IMG/VR virus record: IMGVR_UViG_3300036770_006893
Location: 160,358-224,357 of that record
DNA: 64,000 nt
Strand: one strand, 5' to 3'
Shown: one piece after another, positions 1,647 through 54,024 of the stretch
Numbering within the stretch: the stretch's first letter is position 1
Layout of the letters: each line of letters begins with the position of its first letter
Notes under the pieces: generated by a model
Seen by the model: only the letters and a program-made list of their open reading frames with translations
What the model was told of the DNA's origin: nothing
Databases searched by the model: none
Program-made: the position numbers and the translations under genes

Positions 1647-4600
1647 TTAAATATCCCAACCCGCCTGTCTAAGATTAACTAATGCTTGCGCACCAGGAAT
1701 AGTTCTTGCGATTATCGTACCACGACTACTAGTACGCACTCTAATTTTTGTATTAGCAGTATAATTGTACTCGAACGCAGAACTTGCTGGCCTGGGTGTT
1801 GTGAAATAAGTAGAGAATAATGATTTATTTTGATCCCATTTGATTAACAGATTGTCCAAGTCACTGCCCGGTAAATACAAATCGCTCAGTAAAGCAGGGA
1901 GAATCCAATCGTCTGTTCCCAGAATACTAAAGTCTGCCGCATCCTTAAGACTACTAGCATTCCATCTAGATAATTTTGTTGTGTATCCGGTAAGCCTAAA
2001 CATATCTCGCATACTTATAACATTAGAAACATTCCAATTATTGATATCTGTTGTGAAAGCACCAGCATTATAAAACATGCTATTCATATTTGTAACTTGA
2101 GAAGTATCCCAATTGCTTATATTTCCTCTAAAGCTTACAGCCGACTCAAACATAGAACTCATGTTTGTAACTTTACCGGTATTCCAAGAATCTAGTGTAT
2201 CGCCGGTAAATGCCCGAGCGTCTTGAAACATCCTCGACATATTTGTAACATTGCTGGTATCCCACAGGGATAACGGAATATTAAATCTTACACATCCTCG
2301 AAACATGTTATTCATATCATTTATGCTCGATGTGTCCCAGCTCATAACATTAGGGTCATTGAAAGTAGTACATAATGGTAGTTGTATGTGTTCGGCCTTT
2401 GGAATATAATCTGGAACAGAATTGAGGAGTGGTAAAGAGTCTAAAGTTATTCTCTTAAGCGAACTTATCCAAGAAGATATTCCCGTAACACCGCCTGCTA
2501 CACTCGATGTGGGAGTAGAGGTAAAGCTATCAGCAATGACTACATCCGTAGTATTAGTATGATTAATTGGAGTAATTTTAATAGATCCAGTTTTATTCCT
2601 TGCAGTAACCACACTAGGTCTTCTGTCGGTAAAGTTAATAACTAGCCTATGTTTGCCATCAAAGAATACTGTTCCAACTACCCCATCCTGCTGAGTTCCG
2701 CCCTCTACTAAGTACCAGCTGGGCTCCGACGCGTCTATAGTAATCGTTATAGCCATCGTACTAGAATTAATTAGGGTAGAATAATTATGGCCATAATCTA
2801 TAATTAAGGGGCTTATTACTGAGTCAGGTGGTATTGGAGAAACACTAACGCTTGGACTAACAGTAGGACTGATGGTTTGTGTTGGTGTTGCTGTTGCGCT
2901 AACGCTAACGCTAACGCTTGGAGTGGGCGTCATGCTGTGTGTTGGCGTTAGTGTTGGAGTCATGGTTTGCGTTGGTGTTGGAGATCTCGATGGCAATGGT
3001 GTTGGTGTTACTGTTGCGCTCACGCTATTGGTTGGCGTTACTGTTCTTGTTACAGTCGGCGATACTGTTATACTTGGACTAACTGTTTGGCTAACCGTAA
3101 CCGTGGGTGTGGTCGTGGGTGTAGTAGTTGGACTATTAGTTATTGTTGGCGTGGGCGTAGGAGTTCTTGTACTAACGGGAGTTGGAGAAGGAGTTGGGGT
3201 GCATTGTGCTGCACACTTTAATGCAATGTAGTCTGTGCTTGTGGCGCCGGTTGATTCTCTAGTTAATCTAATAAAAGCATTAACATTTACATTACCATTC
3301 AGGAGGGCTAAAGATGTTAATCTAGCATTATTTGCCACATAAACGTGGCCGCCAGCAGGATAAAATGAAACATTGCTAGAATCACTACCAAATCTAAAAT
3401 AGTACTTTTCTTTAGAAATATTATTAGTACTAGACAAGTCATCTATATAACTATCTGGTAAATAATTTTTAATATCTACCATAATTGGTATATATTGTTT
3501 ACATCCATTTCCAGAAACTTCTATTTGACGATTAGAAGGAGCAACAAACTCTACATCTGTTACAAATTCCTTGGAATAGCATTTGTTGCATTTTAATAAA
3601 GACTCAGACCAAGCAATACCACAATTTGGTTGAGATGCTTTTGCTATATTGAAACGTAATATATTATAGATTTTACTAAAATCTTTAGTTTTTTCAGAAA
3701 CTGGTGGTAGATTAAAATTAGTGTTTTTATCATTGACAAATGTAAAGGTGGATGATATTGTATGAGTATCGCCATTTGCAATGAACACATTATCTTTATC
3801 GGATATATGAGCTGGCCAATTACTGTCGGTGGAATCAAAGAAATACGAATATGATGTATTTTTAGATAGTCCAGTTACCACAACATCAACCACAGCATGA
3901 TCACCCTCAAATTGAGACAAATCAATATTATTAGTCATAGATAATATTTTAGGGCATTTATTGTACTGTTCTTTAGCGTCATGGCATGAGTCGCACTGTA
4001 CAGTAAAGATATGATCAACTTTTTCTGGACATAAAGTTTGGATATTTTTAGCATTTCCCGAAGAATCAGATAAAACAGGCTGTGGAGCATCATGGGATTG
4101 GGTGGGATATGTCCAATAGGCGGCTAGTTCTGAATCATAAAATGCCGCCTTGTACCATTCGTTGTGAGATGGAATAAAATATTTTGCATCAAAATTTCTG
4201 TATATTTGGTTATCAAATATTATATTGCGTAAATCATATGCTCCGACTAGTAGTTTATCATTGATAGTAGCAGGATCGTATACTCTAATATTAACGTCAA
4301 AAGACCCGAAGTTATCTTCAGTACATCTGACATCGTTTATGCCTAGGTATAGTCGTCCAGAAATTTCTGGGTTATACCTACCGCCAGTACCTATTTCAAA
4401 AATAGTTCCATTATCTCCTATTTTTCCAACCAAAGCAGCCACTGGTATACTTACTGCTTGAGGAACATCAAAGCCACAAGTTGCGGAAGCGAGTTCTCCT
4501 AAATTAACACCCTCTGGTCCTGTCCATTGGTTTATATCAGTAACATCTGTAAACTTAATTGTCCCAGACGCTTGTATCTCAACAATAGAGTCGGGATGTA

Positions 4601-45565: not shown

Positions 45566-45648
45566 TCTCACGGGAGGGACTCGAACCCTCAAGACTAAAA
45601 GTCGAGGCATTTTAAGTGCCTTGCGTATACCAGTTTCGCCACCGTGAG
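45566..45648 (-). tRNA. tRNA-Leu (anticodon UAA), CCA not encoded
   Basis: Acceptor CTCACGG/CCGTGAG+A, D-arm GCG-AAACTGGTATA-CGC, anticodon AGGCA-CTTAAAA-TGCCT, long V-arm, T-arm GAGGG-TTCGAGT-CCCTC. Confidence 0.95.
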
Positions 45649-45655
45649 GTATGAT

Positions 45656-46087
45656 ATGAATCCTAAACGAAAGTGTTCCTGTTGTCAAGTGTACAAAGAC
45701 GAATCATTTTTTGCATTTAAAAATAGAAAATTAGGTAGATTACAAACTAGATGTAAAAAGTGTCAATCAAAATATCATAAACAACATTATAAATCAAACA
45801 AAGAAACATATTGCGAAAGAGCCAGAGCCAATAATCCAAGATATAAACAAAGAAATCAACAATTTATTAATGAATATAAAGCCAAAAAGGGTTGTAAATT
45901 CTGTCAAGAAAATACTCCTGTATGTTTGGATTTTCATCATGTTGACCCAAACATTAAAGATTGGAATATATCAGTAATGTCTAGGAGTGCTAGTTCAATA
46001 GCAACAATTAAAAATGAAATTGATAAGTGCATAGTAATCTGTTCTAATTGTCATAGAAAACTTCATGCTGGAATAATAAAAGAATAA
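45656..46087 (+). CDS. Free-standing HNH endonuclease
   Basis: C..C Zn fingers; GC..C......LDFHH.DP...E..KC...C.NCHR..H. Confidence 0.85.
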   Translation: MNPKRKCSCCQVYKDESFFAFKNRKLGRLQTRCKKCQSKYHKQHYKSNKETYCERARANNPRYKQRNQQFINEYKAKKGCKFCQENTPVCLDFHHVDPNIKDWNISVMSRSASSIATIKNEIDKCIVICSNCHRKLHAGIIKE

Positions 46088-51892: not shown

Positions 51893-52240
51893 CTATTTTT
51901 GTCTATTTTTAGACATAATTAAATAGTTAGCAGCTTTAATTATGCCGTCTAGATTATCTCCCAACTTTCCCAATCCCGTATTACAAGGCTCACAGAGCCA
52001 ACCCCTAAAACTATCGTCACTATGATCGTGATCTAAACACCATTTAAGAGGAATTTTTCCACAACATTCACAAACTTCTGGTTTTGGCGGAGCTTCTTTA
52101 TGTAGCTGATTTCTTACTTTGCTGTGTTTTTTAACGCAACTTCTACATCTGCTATCCAAATTATCTTTGTACATACTGTGCTTGGGAAAACTTTTATGGT
52201 TTTTTCGTTTGCCGCAGTAAGTACAAATTTTTCTAGGCAT
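51893..52240 (-). CDS. Endonuclease VII-like (His-Me finger) endonuclease
   Basis: C..C...LDHDH....RG.LC..CN..LG...D. Confidence 0.85.
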   Translation of the reverse strand: MPRKICTYCGKRKNHKSFPKHSMYKDNLDSRCRSCVKKHSKVRNQLHKEAPPKPEVCECCGKIPLKWCLDHDHSDDSFRGWLCEPCNTGLGKLGDNLDGIIKAANYLIMSKNRQK

Positions 52241-52242
52241 AC

Positions 52243-52595
52243 TGGACGAGAGGGGAGTCGAACCCCTGTCCTATCATATTTCTAATTACATCTTCTACAA
52301 GTTTATTCTGTTCATAAGTTTTGAGAAAGATTAAAGAACAAACAACATTCATCTTTCCGTACCAACTAGTCTCAGGCTAGAACCCGTTGGCTATTCTAGC
52401 AGCCGAAGGATTTTACGACAATCTTTTGAACGCTACCTTCATCGCTTTCTAAGATTGTTGCTACCTTTTATTAAGCAGCAAGGGCTAACTGAGTATTGCC
52501 AGTTACAGCATTTGGTAGATTTTTAAAGTGGCCTTTCCACCAACCACTACTTGCCAATATAATCTTCTTTATGTAGTCGAAACCTTTACTCGCCC
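52243..52595 (-). ncRNA. ssrA: tmRNA, tag (A)GNTQLALAA*
   Basis: Acceptor GGGCGAG/CTCGTCC+A with G3-U; T-arm AGGGG-TTCGACT-CCCCT; pk1 AGTGGTT/GGCCACT plus GGTGGA/TCTACC; TAACT precedes the resume codon; tag ORF 52471-52500; 353 nt. Confidence 0.93.
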
Positions 52596-52868: not shown

Positions 52869-53360
52869 ATGAATCAATGCGTCAACTGTTCCAAAGAAAC
52901 AAGTAATCCAAGGTTTTGTTCAAGATCATGTGGTGTGTCATACAATAATCGAATAAAACCTAAAAGAATTAAAAGGATGAGAACTTGTAAATTTTGTAAA
53001 AATCAATTTCATTCTCTTCATAGTTATAATCAAAAATATTGTAATAAACAATGCTTACAAAATCATAGAGAATACAATATTCAAACTAATGGTTTTGGTG
53101 AAGGTCATTACCACAATAATTCTATAAGAAAATATCTAGTTAAAAAGCATGGTAATAATTGTATGATTTGCGGACAGTCAGGAAATGATTGGAATGGTAA
53201 ACCTATAACTCTTATTGTGGATCATATTGATGGAAAATCTAATAATAATAAACTAGATAATCTTCGTATTGTTTGTCCTAATTGCGACTGTCAATTACCA
53301 ACCTATAAAGCAAAAAATAAAGGAAATAGTTCTCGTAAATATTACATAGTCCAAAAATAA
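52869..53360 (+). CDS. Free-standing HNH endonuclease
   Basis: FCSRSC/YCNKQC Zn repeats; C..CG...W.GK...L.VDHIDG...NN...NLR..CPNC. Confidence 0.88.
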   Translation: MNQCVNCSKETSNPRFCSRSCGVSYNNRIKPKRIKRMRTCKFCKNQFHSLHSYNQKYCNKQCLQNHREYNIQTNGFGEGHYHNNSIRKYLVKKHGNNCMICGQSGNDWNGKPITLIVDHIDGKSNNNKLDNLRIVCPNCDCQLPTYKAKNKGNSSRKYYIVQK

Positions 53361-53440
53361 TACTCCTGCTTGGAATCGAACCAAGTCCCCTTTCGGATTA
53401 CCTTATAAGAGTAATTGCCGGGAACCACCGGCACAGGAGC
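53361..53440 (-). tRNA. tRNA-Ile (anticodon UAU) with extended variable arm, CCA not encoded
   Basis: Acceptor GCTCCTG/CAGGAGT+A, D-arm CCGG-TGGTTC-CCGG, anticodon TTACT-CTTATAA-GGTAA, V-region TCCGAAAGGGGA, T-arm CTTGG-TTCGATT-CCAAG. Confidence 0.85.
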
Positions 53441-53449
53441 GTATGTTGT

Positions 53450-53478
53450 ATTATACACTATCGACCGATCTCTGTCAA
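53450..53478 (-). promoter_or_regulatory. Early promoter for tRNA-Ile
   Basis: TTGACA-GAGATCGGTCGATAGTG-TATAAT. Confidence 0.75.
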
Positions 53479-54024
53479 CTCTCCAGTTTCGTTTTTCAAT
53501 TTTTCCACAAAGTTTCTATAAATTCCCATAACAATACCACTAGTTGTTCCCACGTTGAGAGAACGAACGCTACCATAATTAGGAATAGTAAGGATAATAT
53601 CACACTTATCCAAAATGAAATCTGATAGTCCTTTATTTTCTTCTCCAAATAAAAATATAGGTTGAGTAGTATTGTAGTATTGATAATCAAAGAGATTAAC
53701 GGTTTTGTGACTATATTCGGGAACGTTATTTTCAATAGCAATAACAGTCCTACCAGGGCATTGTGAAATAAAAGACTGTTCATCTTTATGGTGATACATT
53801 GGTGTGTAGTGATGGGTTCCTACGCTGCCTCTTTTATCCCATTTCTTTTTACCGATATAATGGACACTACTAAACCCAAAAAAGTTTGCGTTACGAACCA
53901 GTGTACTAAGATTAAAATCTCCGCTAATATTAATCATGGCAACACTCGCTGGTATGCTGTTACTAATACAGTATTCAGCAATATCAGGAATAGCATATTC
54001 TTTTAGGCTATCAATCACGTTCAT
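53458..54024 (-). CDS. SpoU/TrmH-family RNA 2'-O-methyltransferase
   Basis: N..TL.R.A..FG, FGEE..GL, IP..GSVRSLNV. Confidence 0.85.
   Translation of the reverse strand: MNVIDSLKEYAIPDIAEYCISNSIPASVAMINISGDFNLSTLVRNANFFGFSSVHYIGKKKWDKRGSVGTHHYTPMYHHKDEQSFISQCPGRTVIAIENNVPEYSHKTVNLFDYQYYNTTQPIFLFGEENKGLSDFILDKCDIILTIPNYGSVRSLNVGTTSGIVMGIYRNFVEKLKNETGELTEIGR

What the first reader, a model, noticed from the sequence alone, without database searches (positions are those of the whole stretch)
53361..53440. tRNA-Ile with UAU anticodon and a class II-like variable arm
Established: most bacteria read AUA with lysidine-modified tRNA-Ile2(CAU), and tRNA-Ile normally has a short variable loop. Seen: UAU anticodon, Ile-type A73, C4-G69 and A37/A38, but also a G1-U72 pair, a 6-nt D-loop and a ~12-nt variable region with a CC-GAAA-GG hairpin. 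Inference: TilS-independent AUA decoding, with a shape that may limit AUG misreading or evade anticodon nucleases. The adjacent SpoU methylase could modify it.
Basis: partly seen in the sequence, partly recalled or inferred. Interest (0 to 1): 0.6.

Follow-up and report, generated by a model that had tools for sequence, protein, structure and literature searches.

The report
Odd-shaped phage tRNA-Ile reading AUA
A 224-kb phage from aquatic metagenomes carries a conserved, oddly built transfer RNA with its own promoter that most likely supplies isoleucine at AUA, the phage's commonest isoleucine codon, without needing the bacterial lysidine enzyme TilS; the gene is real, but why it has this shape is unknown.

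Summary
The window is the end of a complete 224-kb phage genome, not a bacterium.

The gene is real. I found it in 51 related phage or metagenome loci (17 distinct sequences). All four cloverleaf stems show compensatory changes: 100% of cells are paired and 7 pairs change on both sides. It is nevertheless too deviant for Rfam's tRNA model.

It has its own perfect TTGACA-17-TATAAT promoter, conserved in nearly all related loci. AUA is the phage's commonest Ile codon (47% of Ile codons, 38.8 per 1000). AUA evolves as Ile, not Leu. The phage has no TilS.

In one relative the same promoter and flanks hold a different tRNA-Ile(UAU). So what is kept at this site is AUA decoding, not the shape.

The SpoU idea is not supported. 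Two complete relatives carry the same tRNA and no SpoU gene, and adjacency is limited to one subclade.

The ideas that the shape limits AUG misreading or evades nucleases remain untested.

A recurrent HNH endonuclease gene abuts the tRNA's 3' end.

Verdict: a new structural variant of a known kind (phage AUA-decoding tRNA). Moderate interest.

The parts
53361..53440 (-). tRNA-Ile(UAU) gene, 80 nt. Acceptor 5' strand 53440-53434, D arm 53431-53418, anticodon arm 53415-53397, T arm 53385-53369, acceptor 3' strand 53368-53362, discriminator A at 53361. No CCA is encoded.
   Evidence: ARAGORN. Covariation in all four stems. The CM built from the family scores it at 111 bits, single copy in the genome.
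53403..53409 (-). Anticodon loop CUUAUAA. The anticodon UAU lies at 53407-53405.
   Evidence: Sequence. The loop is identical in all 19 viral-contig members found with patterns that left the anticodon free.
53422..53427 (-). Six-nucleotide D loop UGGUUC. A14 and R15 are lacking; G18G19-like GG is kept. Downstream of the D stem come two extra unpaired nucleotides (CA, 53417-53416).
   Evidence: D-stem pair 12-23 covaries, G-C in 9 and A-U in 8 of 17 distinct sequences.
53386..53396 (-). Extended variable region, CC-GAAA-GG followed by GGA (11 nt; 13 nt in some relatives).
   Evidence: The loop varies GAAA / GAGA / GUAAAA while the flanking CC and GG are invariant. There is no covariation evidence for the 2-bp stem.
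53450..53478 (-). Sigma-70-type promoter TTGACA-17 nt-TATAAT (12 of 12 matches). The -10 hexamer ends 9 nt before tRNA position 1. The -35 hexamer overlaps the last SpoU codons.
   Evidence: It is conserved upstream of the tRNA in nearly all related loci, in every genomic context.
52869..53360 (+). HNH-type endonuclease ORF (163 aa) on the opposite strand. Its stop codon ends one base before the tRNA's 3' end. Probably a free-standing homing endonuclease that travels with the tRNA gene.
   Evidence: Weak Pfam HNH and HNH_3 hits, all below cut-off. DNA hits to annotated phage HNH homing endonucleases. Homologs at 56-91% identity abut the tRNA 3' end in at least 10 related loci in two different contexts, and are absent in others.
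53458..54024 (-). SpoU/SPOUT-family RNA 2'-O-methyltransferase ORF (188 aa), directly upstream. A neighbour, not shown to be a partner.
   Evidence: Pfam SpoU_methylase 4.2e-23. No NCBIfam subfamily reaches its cut-off. Adjacent to the tRNA only in a subclade. No SpoU-family gene in complete relatives G001 and G002, which carry the tRNA.
52240..52595 (-). Phage-encoded tmRNA (tag GNTQLALAA), the next gene downstream on the same strand. In relatives it follows the tRNA directly or takes over the tRNA's promoter.
   Evidence: ARAGORN. Rfam tmRNA 120.5 bits..

Best explanation
This is a functional phage-encoded elongator tRNA that decodes AUA as isoleucine.

Proposed steps (all inferred):
1. The host RNA polymerase transcribes it from its own consensus sigma-70-type promoter, with a leader of only a few nucleotides.
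2. Host enzymes trim it and add CCA. The phage encodes neither the CCA end nor a CCA-adding enzyme.
3. Host IleRS charges it through A35, U36, A37 (presumably t6A), A38 and A73.
4. It pairs its U34 with the A of AUA.

Because the anticodon is UAU rather than CAU, it needs no lysidine, so its output does not depend on host TilS capacity. The phage needs this because AUA is its commonest Ile codon, about 4% of all codons.

The unusual core is a conserved, lineage-specific remodelling of a wider group of phage tRNA-Ile(UAU) genes. It comprises the 6-nt D loop, the extra CA after the D stem, the R26-U44 pair and the 11-13-nt variable region capped by a GNRA-like loop. Its purpose is not known.

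Shown: the gene, its fold, its conservation, the promoter motif, the codon demand and the Ile meaning of AUA.
Inferred: transcription, processing, charging by IleRS and decoding.
For: Gene and fold:
- ARAGORN call.
- 51 further loci, 17 distinct sequences, 100% of cells paired, compensatory changes at 1-72, 4-69, 6-67, 12-23, 27-43, 28-42 and 51-63.
- Single copy in three complete phage genomes and one partial contig (43% complete).

Anticodon:
- The anticodon loop and A73 are invariant, including in searches that did not fix them.

Expression signals:
- A 12/12 sigma-70 promoter, conserved in all contexts.
- Metatranscriptome contigs cover the gene. This is weak evidence.

Demand:
- AUA is 47% of Ile codons, 38.8 per 1000.
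- The phage's other tRNAs also mostly read A-ending codons.
- No TilS in the phage.

Meaning of AUA:
- Positions with AUA align with I 59%, V 12%, L 9% in related phages, like AUU (I 66%, L 12%, V 10%).
- In ribonucleotide reductase alpha against 4 bacterial homologs, AUA aligns with I 53%, V 17%, L 12%, against AUU at I 63%, V 17%, L 13%.

Functional equivalence:
- In L037 the same SpoU end, promoter and downstream flank hold a different tRNA-Ile(UAU) body.
- Other phage tRNA-Ile(UAU) genes share the UUACU-CUUAUAA-GGUAA arm, G1.U72 and A73 but have 3-5-nt variable loops.
Against: - Rfam's tRNA model does not report it at all. A14 and R15 and the usual single nucleotide 26 spacing are missing, so correct L-shape folding is assumed, not shown.
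- E. coli IleRS charges UAU-anticodon tRNA poorly, and on E. coli ribosomes a UAU anticodon also reads AUG (PMC3575796). Efficient and accurate use by an unknown host is therefore not guaranteed.
- Two of the three minor E. coli IleRS determinants are not matched (12-23 is G-C or A-U; 29-41 is A-U).
- The host is unidentified.
- The RNA evidence comes only from assembled metatranscriptome contigs, which may contain DNA.
- The metagenome search pattern fixed the D loop and the anticodon loop. Their invariance in that set is partly built in.
Confidence: 0.72

Rival explanations
1. The unusual shape is itself the adaptation. The remodelled D arm and extended variable region would let the phage's AUA decoder escape a host tRNA-targeting defence (an anticodon nuclease or similar), or tune it against AUG misreading, while the host's own tRNA-Ile2 is attacked or limiting. 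This extends the main explanation rather than excluding it.
For: - The odd elements are invariant, or vary only in the hairpin loop, across relatives whose stems have changed many times.
- The same phage clade also carries a class II-shaped tRNA-Asn(GUU) with a GAAA-capped variable arm, alternating with normal 72-74-nt Asn tRNAs at the same cluster position. Variable-arm expansion therefore recurs.
- Phage tRNAs that evade tRNA-targeting defences are documented (PMC10264068, PMC12409363).
Against: - No defence system, nuclease or host is identified.
- The documented evasion cases act through anticodon-loop changes, and here the loop is ordinary.
- A differently built tRNA-Ile(UAU) sits in the same slot in L037, so the shape is not indispensable.
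- Part of the invariance was imposed by the search patterns.
Confidence: 0.15
2. It is a mis-acylating or recoding tRNA. As with nematode nev-tRNA-Ile(UAU), which is charged with Leu, or bacterial allo-tRNAs with UAU anticodons, which are thought to be charged with Ser, the long variable region would redirect it to LeuRS or SerRS, so that AUA is read partly as another amino acid.
For: - Variable region of 10 nt or more, together with A73 (the Leu discriminator).
- Precedents: PMC3333845 (nev-tRNA) and PMC5389517 / PMC7609411 (allo-tRNA, with UAU among the commonest anticodons).
Against: - AUA positions have the same replacement spectrum as AUU and AUC, and unlike Leu codons, both within the phage clade and against bacterial homologs.
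- The fold is 7/5, not 8/4 or 9/3, and the discriminator is A73, not G73 or U73.
- The variable stem is only 2 bp.
- The D arm is unlike the phage's own Leu and Ser tRNAs.
- No sequence similarity to tRNA-Leu stands out.
- C2-G71 is a reported antideterminant for E. coli SerRS (PMC9976931).
Confidence: 0.06
3. It is a tRNA-like RNA with a non-translational role, for example a decoy for a tRNA-targeting enzyme or the recognition landmark of the adjacent HNH homing endonuclease. The anticodon would then have no decoding role.
For: - It fails the general tRNA covariance model.
- It is tightly associated with an HNH ORF at its 3' end in many loci.
Against: - The anticodon loop has the exact U33 / A37 / A38 frame of a decoder, and UAU is invariant.
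- The T loop, the GG of the D loop, the 7/5 geometry and A73 are all kept.
- The slot holds another tRNA-Ile(UAU) in L037.
- It matches the phage's heaviest Ile codon.
- Many members lack the HNH ORF.
Confidence: 0.08
4. It is a decaying pseudogene or an ARAGORN false positive.
For: It has the lowest ARAGORN score in the genome and no Rfam hit.
Against: - Seven pairs show double compensatory changes and there are no unpaired cells among 17 distinct sequences.
- The promoter is conserved.
- It is a single conserved copy in three complete genomes.
Confidence: 0.02

Closest known systems
Bacterial tRNA-Ile2 with a UAU anticodon (Mycoplasma mobile; also Lactiplantibacillus plantarum, Bifidobacterium, Neorickettsia): PMC3575796, PMC3919564
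   Same: The UAU anticodon reads AUA without lysidine. A73 and A37/A38 are present. It is independent of TilS.
   Different: - Those are cellular class I tRNAs of normal shape, working with an adapted IleRS and/or ribosome.
- This one is phage-borne and must use an unadapted host IleRS and ribosome.
- It has a 6-nt D loop, two extra nucleotides after the D stem and an 11-13-nt variable region.
Other phage tRNA-Ile(UAU) genes seen here (L016/L017/L022 type, L029/L032 type, L023, the L026 repeats, and the L037 allele)
   Same: Same anticodon arm UUACU-CUUAUAA-GGUAA in most (L037's stem differs). G1.U72 in most. A73. A possible R26-U44 sixth pair. A GCCGGUGG-like motif in the D region in the L016 type and, less exactly, in L037. 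L037 sits in the identical promoter and flank slot.
   Different: They have 3-6-nt variable loops and 7-11-nt D loops. The family CM scores them at only 21-44 bits against 111 bits for the window gene, and does not hit L037.
Phage T4 tRNA set and its tRNA-Ile (from my own knowledge, not checked here)
   Same: An AT-rich phage supplies decoders of A-ending codons (Arg UCU, Gln UUG, Gly UCC, Leu UAA, Thr UGU, Ile for AUA). The T4 tRNA region also holds a free-standing homing endonuclease (SegB).
   Different: As far as I recall, T4 tRNA-Ile has a CAU-type anticodon that depends on host lysidine formation and has a normal shape. Here the anticodon is UAU. L. curvatus prophage Ile tRNAs are also mostly CAU (PMC10688831).
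allo-tRNAs (8/4 or 9/3 tRNAs, often with a UAU anticodon): PMC5389517, PMC7609411
   Same: Long variable region, 6-bp anticodon stem, compact D arm, UAU anticodon. Found in metagenomes, with some in phages.
   Different: Here the acceptor/T geometry is 7/5 with covariation support, the discriminator is A73 rather than G73 or U73, the D loop keeps GG, and the variable stem is only 2 bp. AUA behaves as Ile.
Nematode nev-tRNA-Ile(UAU): PMC3333845
   Same: UAU anticodon combined with a long variable region and A73.
   Different: nev-tRNAs derive from tRNA-Leu, have a true V-arm and a Leu-type D arm, and are charged with Leu. None of that is seen here, and the codon evidence argues for Ile.

Membership tests
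Canonical elongator tRNA (cloverleaf; Rfam RF00005) | 7-bp acceptor stem plus 5-bp T stem, 5-bp anticodon stem with 7-nt loop, D stem | tested here: met
   ARAGORN structure. 24 pairs, 100% of cells paired, 7 pairs with changes on both sides.
Canonical elongator tRNA (cloverleaf; Rfam RF00005) | T loop UUCRANY with G53-C61, and GG in the D loop for the elbow contact | tested here: met
   UUCGAUU loop closed by G-C, and UGGUUC D loop. The contact itself is not testable here.
Canonical elongator tRNA (cloverleaf; Rfam RF00005) | Standard core: U8-A14, R15-Y48, D loop of 7-11 nt, and one nucleotide (26) between the D and anticodon stems | tested here: not met
   U8 is present. However, the D loop has 6 nt with U in place of A14 and no R15, and CA plus R26 precede the anticodon stem.
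Canonical elongator tRNA (cloverleaf; Rfam RF00005) | Score at or above the Rfam gathering threshold (29 bits) | tested here: not met
   No RF00005 hit at gathering threshold or at E<=10. In L058 the 7 other tRNAs score 52-74 bits and this one is not reported.
AUA-reading tRNA-Ile with UAU anticodon | Anticodon UAU framed by U33 and A37, with A38 | tested here: met
   Loop CUUAUAA. Invariant in all family members, including those found without fixing it.
AUA-reading tRNA-Ile with UAU anticodon | Discriminator A73 (a strong IleRS determinant; PMC9976931) | tested here: met
   A at 53361, invariant in 17 of 17 distinct sequences.
AUA-reading tRNA-Ile with UAU anticodon | Minor E. coli IleRS determinants C4-G69, U12-A23 and C29-G41 (PMC9976931) | tested here: inconclusive
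   C4-G69 in 16 of 17 (A-U in one). Pair 12-23 is G-C or A-U. Pair 29-41 is A-U. These determinants are defined for E. coli, and the host is unknown.
AUA-reading tRNA-Ile with UAU anticodon | Charged with isoleucine, so that AUA means Ile | tested here: inconclusive
   Charging is not testable with these tools. Indirectly, AUA positions show the Ile replacement spectrum.
AUA-reading tRNA-Ile with UAU anticodon | Class I shape (4-5-nt variable loop), as in all described tRNA-Ile | tested here: not met
   Variable region of 11-13 nt.
TilS-dependent tRNA-Ile2 | CAU anticodon converted to lysidine-AU | tested here: not met
   The anticodon is UAU. No CAU tRNA and no TilS in the phage genome.
Class II tRNAs (Leu/Ser/Tyr type) | Variable region of 10 nt or more (PMC7609411) | tested here: met
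   11 nt, 12 with U44, and 13 in L062 and L072.
Class II tRNAs (Leu/Ser/Tyr type) | A helical variable arm of 3 bp or more, and the 3-bp D stem with large D loop seen in the phage's own class II tRNAs | tested here: not met
   Only a 2-bp CC/GG stem, never varying. The D stem is 4 bp with a 6-nt loop, against a 3-bp stem and 10-11-nt loop in the phage's Leu, Ser and class II-shaped Asn tRNAs.
allo-tRNA | 8/4 or 9/3 acceptor/T-stem geometry | tested here: not met
   7/5 geometry. Pairs 1-72 to 7-66 and a 5-bp T stem are all kept, with covariation at 1-72, 4-69, 6-67 and 51-63.
allo-tRNA | G73 or U73 with a long V-arm (Ser identity) | tested here: not met
   A73 is invariant and the variable stem is 2 bp.
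nev-tRNA-like Leu-charged UAU tRNA | Derived from tRNA-Leu and decoding AUA as Leu | tested here: not met
   No similarity to Leu tRNAs stands out. AUA aligns with Ile 53-59% and Leu 9-12%, as do AUU and AUC.

The most novel reading that the evidence does not exclude
A clade of aquatic jumbo phages has rebuilt the core of some of its own class I tRNAs. Ile(UAU) has a 6-nt D loop, a CA bulge and a GNRA-capped variable mini-arm. Asn(GUU) has a full class II shape with a GAAA-capped arm. These would act as a structural signature that separates phage tRNAs from host tRNAs. The purpose could be to escape a host tRNA-targeting defence, or to let the phage keep translating AUA when the host's lysidine-dependent tRNA-Ile2 is attacked or limiting.
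Probability: 0.15. Interest if true: 0.75.

Novelty: new variant of a known kind. Interest (0 to 1): 0.45.

Why it matters
Phage tRNAs are usually explained either by codon compensation or, more recently, by escape from tRNA-targeting defences.

- This case fits codon compensation cleanly. AUA is the commonest Ile codon, and the decoder has its own consensus promoter.
- It also bypasses the host's one essential modification step for AUA, lysidine formation by TilS.
- It shows that a tRNA-Ile can work, or at least persist under strong purifying selection, with an architecture that standard covariance-model annotation misses entirely. Surveys of phage tRNAs that rely on such models will undercount this type.
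- It offers a natural test case for two open questions raised by the Mycoplasma mobile work (PMC3575796): how an ordinary bacterial IleRS and ribosome handle a UAU anticodon, and what a compact D loop combined with an enlarged variable region does to the tRNA core.

Tried and rejected
- **Rfam scan.** Run at gathering threshold and at E<=10 on a 301-nt slice. No tRNA hit, only a chance mascRNA match at 16.8 bits.
- **DNA search against cultured phages.** Only the HNH ORF hit anything. The terminase is about 25% identical to Bacillus siphophage terminases, so no named relative was found.
- **SpoU as a partner.** Family scans give no subfamily. PHROGs gives nothing. Comparative genomics argues against an obligate link.
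- **Host identification.** Unresolved.
  - The tmRNA's tag-coding stretch gave weak BLAST hits in about 8 of 301 Bacteroidota genomes and none in 301 Bacillota or 301 Pseudomonadota genomes. All other hits were generic T-arm matches.
  - Ribonucleotide reductase alpha is 52-53% identical to that of 4 of 61 Bacteroidota genomes, but no control phylum was searched.
  - Against this, the conserved TTGACA-17-TATAAT promoters are not the Bacteroidota promoter type (my own knowledge).
- **Exact-pattern scan of species-representative prokaryote genomes** for the anticodon arm. It found only normal-shaped tRNA-Ile(UAU) genes (one on a Cytophagales chromosome, two on small phage-like MAG contigs) and no member of this family. 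Only the TTACT/GGTAA variant was tested.
- **Search for the tRNA's origin.** Global alignment to 146 distinct tRNAs from the loci found no close relative.
- **Reads.** Only assembled contigs of metatranscriptomes were available. They cover the tRNA but cannot show ends, strand or level.
- **tRNAscan-SE isotype models.** Not available here.
- **8/4 alternative fold (U8.G65 in place of C49-G65).** Considered and rejected as weaker and unsupported.
- **Six-bp D stem (U8-A25, G9-C24) from the MFE fold.** It cannot be tested because those positions never vary.

Full report
**What is at the coordinates**

ARAGORN reports three RNA genes in the window: tRNA-Leu(UAA) at 45566-45648, a tmRNA at 52243-52595, and tRNA-Ile(UAU) at 53361-53440. 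All are on the minus strand.

- a G1.U72 pair, a C4-G69 pair and discriminator A73;
- anticodon loop CUUAUAA;
- a 4-bp D stem with the 6-nt loop UGGUUC;
- an 11-nt variable region, CC-GAAA-GG followed by GGA;
- a canonical T arm.

Three further oddities are present:
- two unpaired nucleotides (CA) follow the D stem;
- R26 can pair with U44, making a sixth anticodon-stem pair;
- no CCA is encoded.

The ARAGORN score (105.4) is the lowest of the genome's nine tRNAs.

Rfam's tRNA model does not report the gene, either at the gathering threshold or at E<=10 on a 301-nt slice. In a related tRNA cluster (L058) the same model finds the seven neighbouring tRNAs at 52-74 bits and misses only this one.

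**What genome this is**

The window is the last 64 kb of a single 224,357-bp contig with 35.8% G+C. The tools identify it as an IMG/VR virus record that CheckV rates 100% complete.

The genome encodes a large terminase, a portal protein, RIIA, a DnaE-type polymerase, ligase, ThyX, UvdE, endonuclease VII and HNH endonucleases. It has no close cultured relative; the terminase is about 25% identical to those of Bacillus siphophages.

So the finding concerns a jumbo phage, not a bacterium. The phage has nine tRNAs: Gly UCC, Ser ACU, Asn GUU, Gln UUG, Thr UGU, Arg UCU, Glu UUC, Leu UAA and Ile UAU. Most of them read A-ending codons. It has no TilS, no SmpB and no CCA-adding enzyme.

**Is the gene real?**

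Exact-pattern scans of viral and metagenome contigs recovered the gene in 51 further loci. They come from aquatic samples and give 17 distinct sequences.

On their alignment (A1), every cell of the ARAGORN cloverleaf forms a standard pair. Seven pairs change on both sides:

| Pair | Variants seen |
|---|---|
| 1-72 | GU / AU / CG |
| 4-69 | CG / AU |
| 6-67 | UA / CG |
| 12-23 | GC / AU |
| 27-43 | covaries |
| 28-42 | covaries |
| 51-63 | UA / AU |

None of 500 shuffles reaches these values, and slid controls give 0-1 such pairs. A covariance model built from the family finds exactly one copy in each of three complete genomes (G000, G001, G002) and one in a partial contig (G003, 43% complete). 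This excludes both a false positive and decay.

Two cautions apply.
- The metagenome pattern fixed the D loop and the anticodon loop. Their invariance is independent only in the viral-contig searches that left them free. In those, all 19 members still had UGGUUC, CA and CUUAUAA.
- The 2-bp stem of the variable hairpin never varies, so it has no covariation support. Only its loop varies (GAAA, GAGA, GUAAAA). That is what a hairpin loop would tolerate.

**Expression signals and neighbourhood**

A perfect TTGACA-17-TATAAT promoter lies at 53478-53450 on the minus strand. Its -10 hexamer ends 9 nt before tRNA position 1.

The same promoter, with small variations, precedes the tRNA in nearly every related locus. 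This holds whether the gene follows SpoU, sits in a tRNA cluster (Thr-Gln-Asn-Ser-Tyr-Ile-Glu-Lys), or stands before the tmRNA. The tRNA is therefore its own transcription unit.

Assembled contigs from two metatranscriptome libraries cover it. One is a relative whose flanks differ while the tRNA is identical. Such contigs cannot prove transcription.

An HNH-type ORF (52869-53360, plus strand) ends one base before the tRNA's 3' end. Homologs at 56-91% identity occupy the same place in at least ten loci in both kinds of context, and are absent from others. This is the pattern of a free-standing homing endonuclease.

**The SpoU idea**

The upstream ORF is a SPOUT methyltransferase (Pfam 4.2e-23), but no subfamily model reaches its cut-off.

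It is adjacent to the tRNA only in the window's subclade: L006/L036, L054, L056 and L074. Two complete relatives that carry the same tRNA have no SpoU-family gene anywhere. An obligate partnership is therefore not supported. A facultative one cannot be excluded.

**What the tRNA does**

In 205 ORFs, AUA is the commonest Ile codon: 47% of Ile codons, 38.8 per 1000 codons.

I tested whether the long variable region means recoding. There are precedents: nematode nev-tRNA-Ile(UAU) is charged with Leu (PMC3333845), and allo-tRNAs, presumed Ser-accepting, often carry UAU (PMC5389517, PMC7609411).

| Comparison | Codon | Ile | Val | Leu |
|---|---|---|---|---|
| 47,598 aligned codon pairs with related phage loci | AUA | 59% | 12% | 9% |
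| same | AUU | 66% | 10% | 12% |
| same | AUC | 67% | 12% | 9% |
| same | UUA | 9% | 3% | 72% |
| Ribonucleotide reductase alpha vs four bacterial homologs at ~53% identity, 20 AUA codons | AUA | 53% | 17% | 12% |
| same | AUU | 63% | 17% | 13% |

So AUA means Ile in this phage.

The strongest functional argument is an allelic swap. In L037 the SpoU end, the promoter and the downstream flank are homologous to the window, but the tRNA body between them is a different 76-nt tRNA-Ile(UAU) with a 6-nt variable loop. In L040 the same promoter drives the tmRNA directly. What is conserved at this slot is an AUA decoder, not a particular shape.

Other phage tRNA-Ile(UAU) genes were found through the shared anticodon arm. 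They have G1.U72 in most cases, A73, the possible R26-U44 pair and, in the L016 type, a GCCGGUGG motif in the D region, but normal 3-5-nt variable loops. The window's family looks like a remodelled branch of that wider group.

**Mechanism, and what is inferred**

The sequence of events I propose is as follows.
1. The host polymerase transcribes the gene from the consensus promoter.
2. Host RNase P and 3' trimming enzymes mature it, and the host adds CCA.
3. Host IleRS charges it through A35, U36, A37 (t6A), A38 and A73. These are the strong determinants listed in PMC9976931.
4. U34 pairs with the A of AUA, with no need for TilS.

These steps are inferred. Known difficulties remain: E. coli IleRS charges UAU-anticodon tRNA poorly, and a UAU anticodon reads AUG on E. 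coli ribosomes (PMC3575796).

Whether the unusual core helps with either problem, or with escape from tRNA-targeting defences (PMC10264068, PMC12409363), is open. One observation bears on this. The clade also carries a class II-shaped tRNA-Asn(GUU), with a GAAA-capped arm in L058/L059, alternating with ordinary Asn tRNAs. Variable-arm enlargement is therefore recurrent in these phages.

**Comparison with known kinds**

- It works like the lysidine-independent tRNA-Ile2(UAU) of Mycoplasma mobile and some Firmicutes. It differs in being phage-borne and in lacking their class I shape.
- It is not an allo-tRNA. Its geometry is 7/5, its discriminator is A73 and its variable stem has 2 bp.
- It is not a nev-type Leu tRNA.
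- It is class II only by the length criterion.
- It fails Rfam's canonical tRNA model but keeps every element needed for EF-Tu and ribosome geometry.

**Host**

The host is unresolved.
- The tag-coding stretch of the tmRNA gives weak hits only in a Bacteroidota sample.
- The reductase resembles that of a few Bacteroidota (no control phylum was searched).
- The conserved TTGACA/TATAAT promoters are not the Bacteroidota promoter type (my own knowledge).

**Verdict**

This is a new structural variant of a known kind. It is of moderate interest to tRNA and phage biologists and is directly testable at the bench.

Noticed in passing
window 52869-53360 (+); also L054, L058, L064, L065, L066, L071, L085, L042, L057: An HNH-type endonuclease ORF whose stop codon abuts the tRNA's 3' end. 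Homologs (56-91% identity) occupy the same position in two different genomic contexts and are absent from many other members. This looks like a free-standing homing endonuclease tied to this tRNA gene.
   Followed up: partly
L037:3495-3700 and L040:3040-3200, compared with window 53330-53530: An allelic swap. In L037 the same SpoU end, promoter and downstream flank enclose a different 76-nt tRNA-Ile(UAU). That tRNA is also missed by Rfam's tRNA model (it hits only tRNA-Sec, at 25.6 bits). In L040 the same promoter runs straight into the tmRNA with no tRNA.
   Followed up: yes
G000:C1:24670-24756 (L034:5671-5757); L058, L059: A class II-shaped tRNA with the Asn anticodon GUU and G73. It has a 3-bp D stem, a 10-nt D loop and a long variable arm, GUC-GAAA-GAC in L058/L059. 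Relatives have ordinary 72-74-nt Asn tRNAs at the same cluster position. Stems differ between copies by many compensatory changes. AAU and AAC still behave as Asn codons. A long-armed tRNA-Asn is unusual and may deserve its own look.
   Followed up: partly
G000:C1:24514-24602 (L034:5515-5603); L041, L042, L051, L058, L059: A tRNA-Ser with anticodon ACU (A34 rather than the usual G34), conserved in many relatives. Others (L062, L072, L078) have GCU at the same position.
   Followed up: no
window 52240-52595 (-): A phage-encoded tmRNA (Rfam 120.5 bits) with its own promoter-like site. No SmpB is found in the phage. The tag varies among relatives: GNTQLALAA, GNNQLALAA, GTNQLALAA, GETQLALAA, GEVNLALAA.
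   Followed up: partly
window 45644-46087 (+), beside tRNA-Leu(UAA) at 45566-45648 (-): The second tRNA in the window also has a cysteine-rich ORF on the opposite strand, overlapping its 5' end by a few bases. The ORF is weakly similar to the HNH ORF (24% identity, E 0.004 pairwise) and has no Pfam hit.
   Followed up: partly
window 53450-53478 and related loci: Conflicting host clues. The conserved consensus sigma-70 promoters (TTGACA-17-TATAAT) argue for a host with classical promoter recognition. The tmRNA tag region and the ribonucleotide reductase give their only or best hits in Bacteroidota samples.
   Followed up: partly
L026 (IMGVR_UViG_650627024_000001, a 617-kb contig), about 2140-4360: At least three, and by the CM five, tandemly spaced copies of a short (68-nt) tRNA-Ile(UAU)-like gene with the same anticodon arm, on a very large viral contig.
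   Followed up: no
L024:1-80 (start of the locus, on a 112-kb viral contig): Another UAU anticodon arm, followed by about 28 nt before a T arm. It could be a second, unrelated long-variable-region or intron-bearing tRNA(UAU). It is cut at the locus edge.
   Followed up: no
G000:C1:79162-122202 (outside the window): A run of giant ORFs (5267, 1875, 2077 and 2498 aa) in the structural region of the phage.
   Followed up: no
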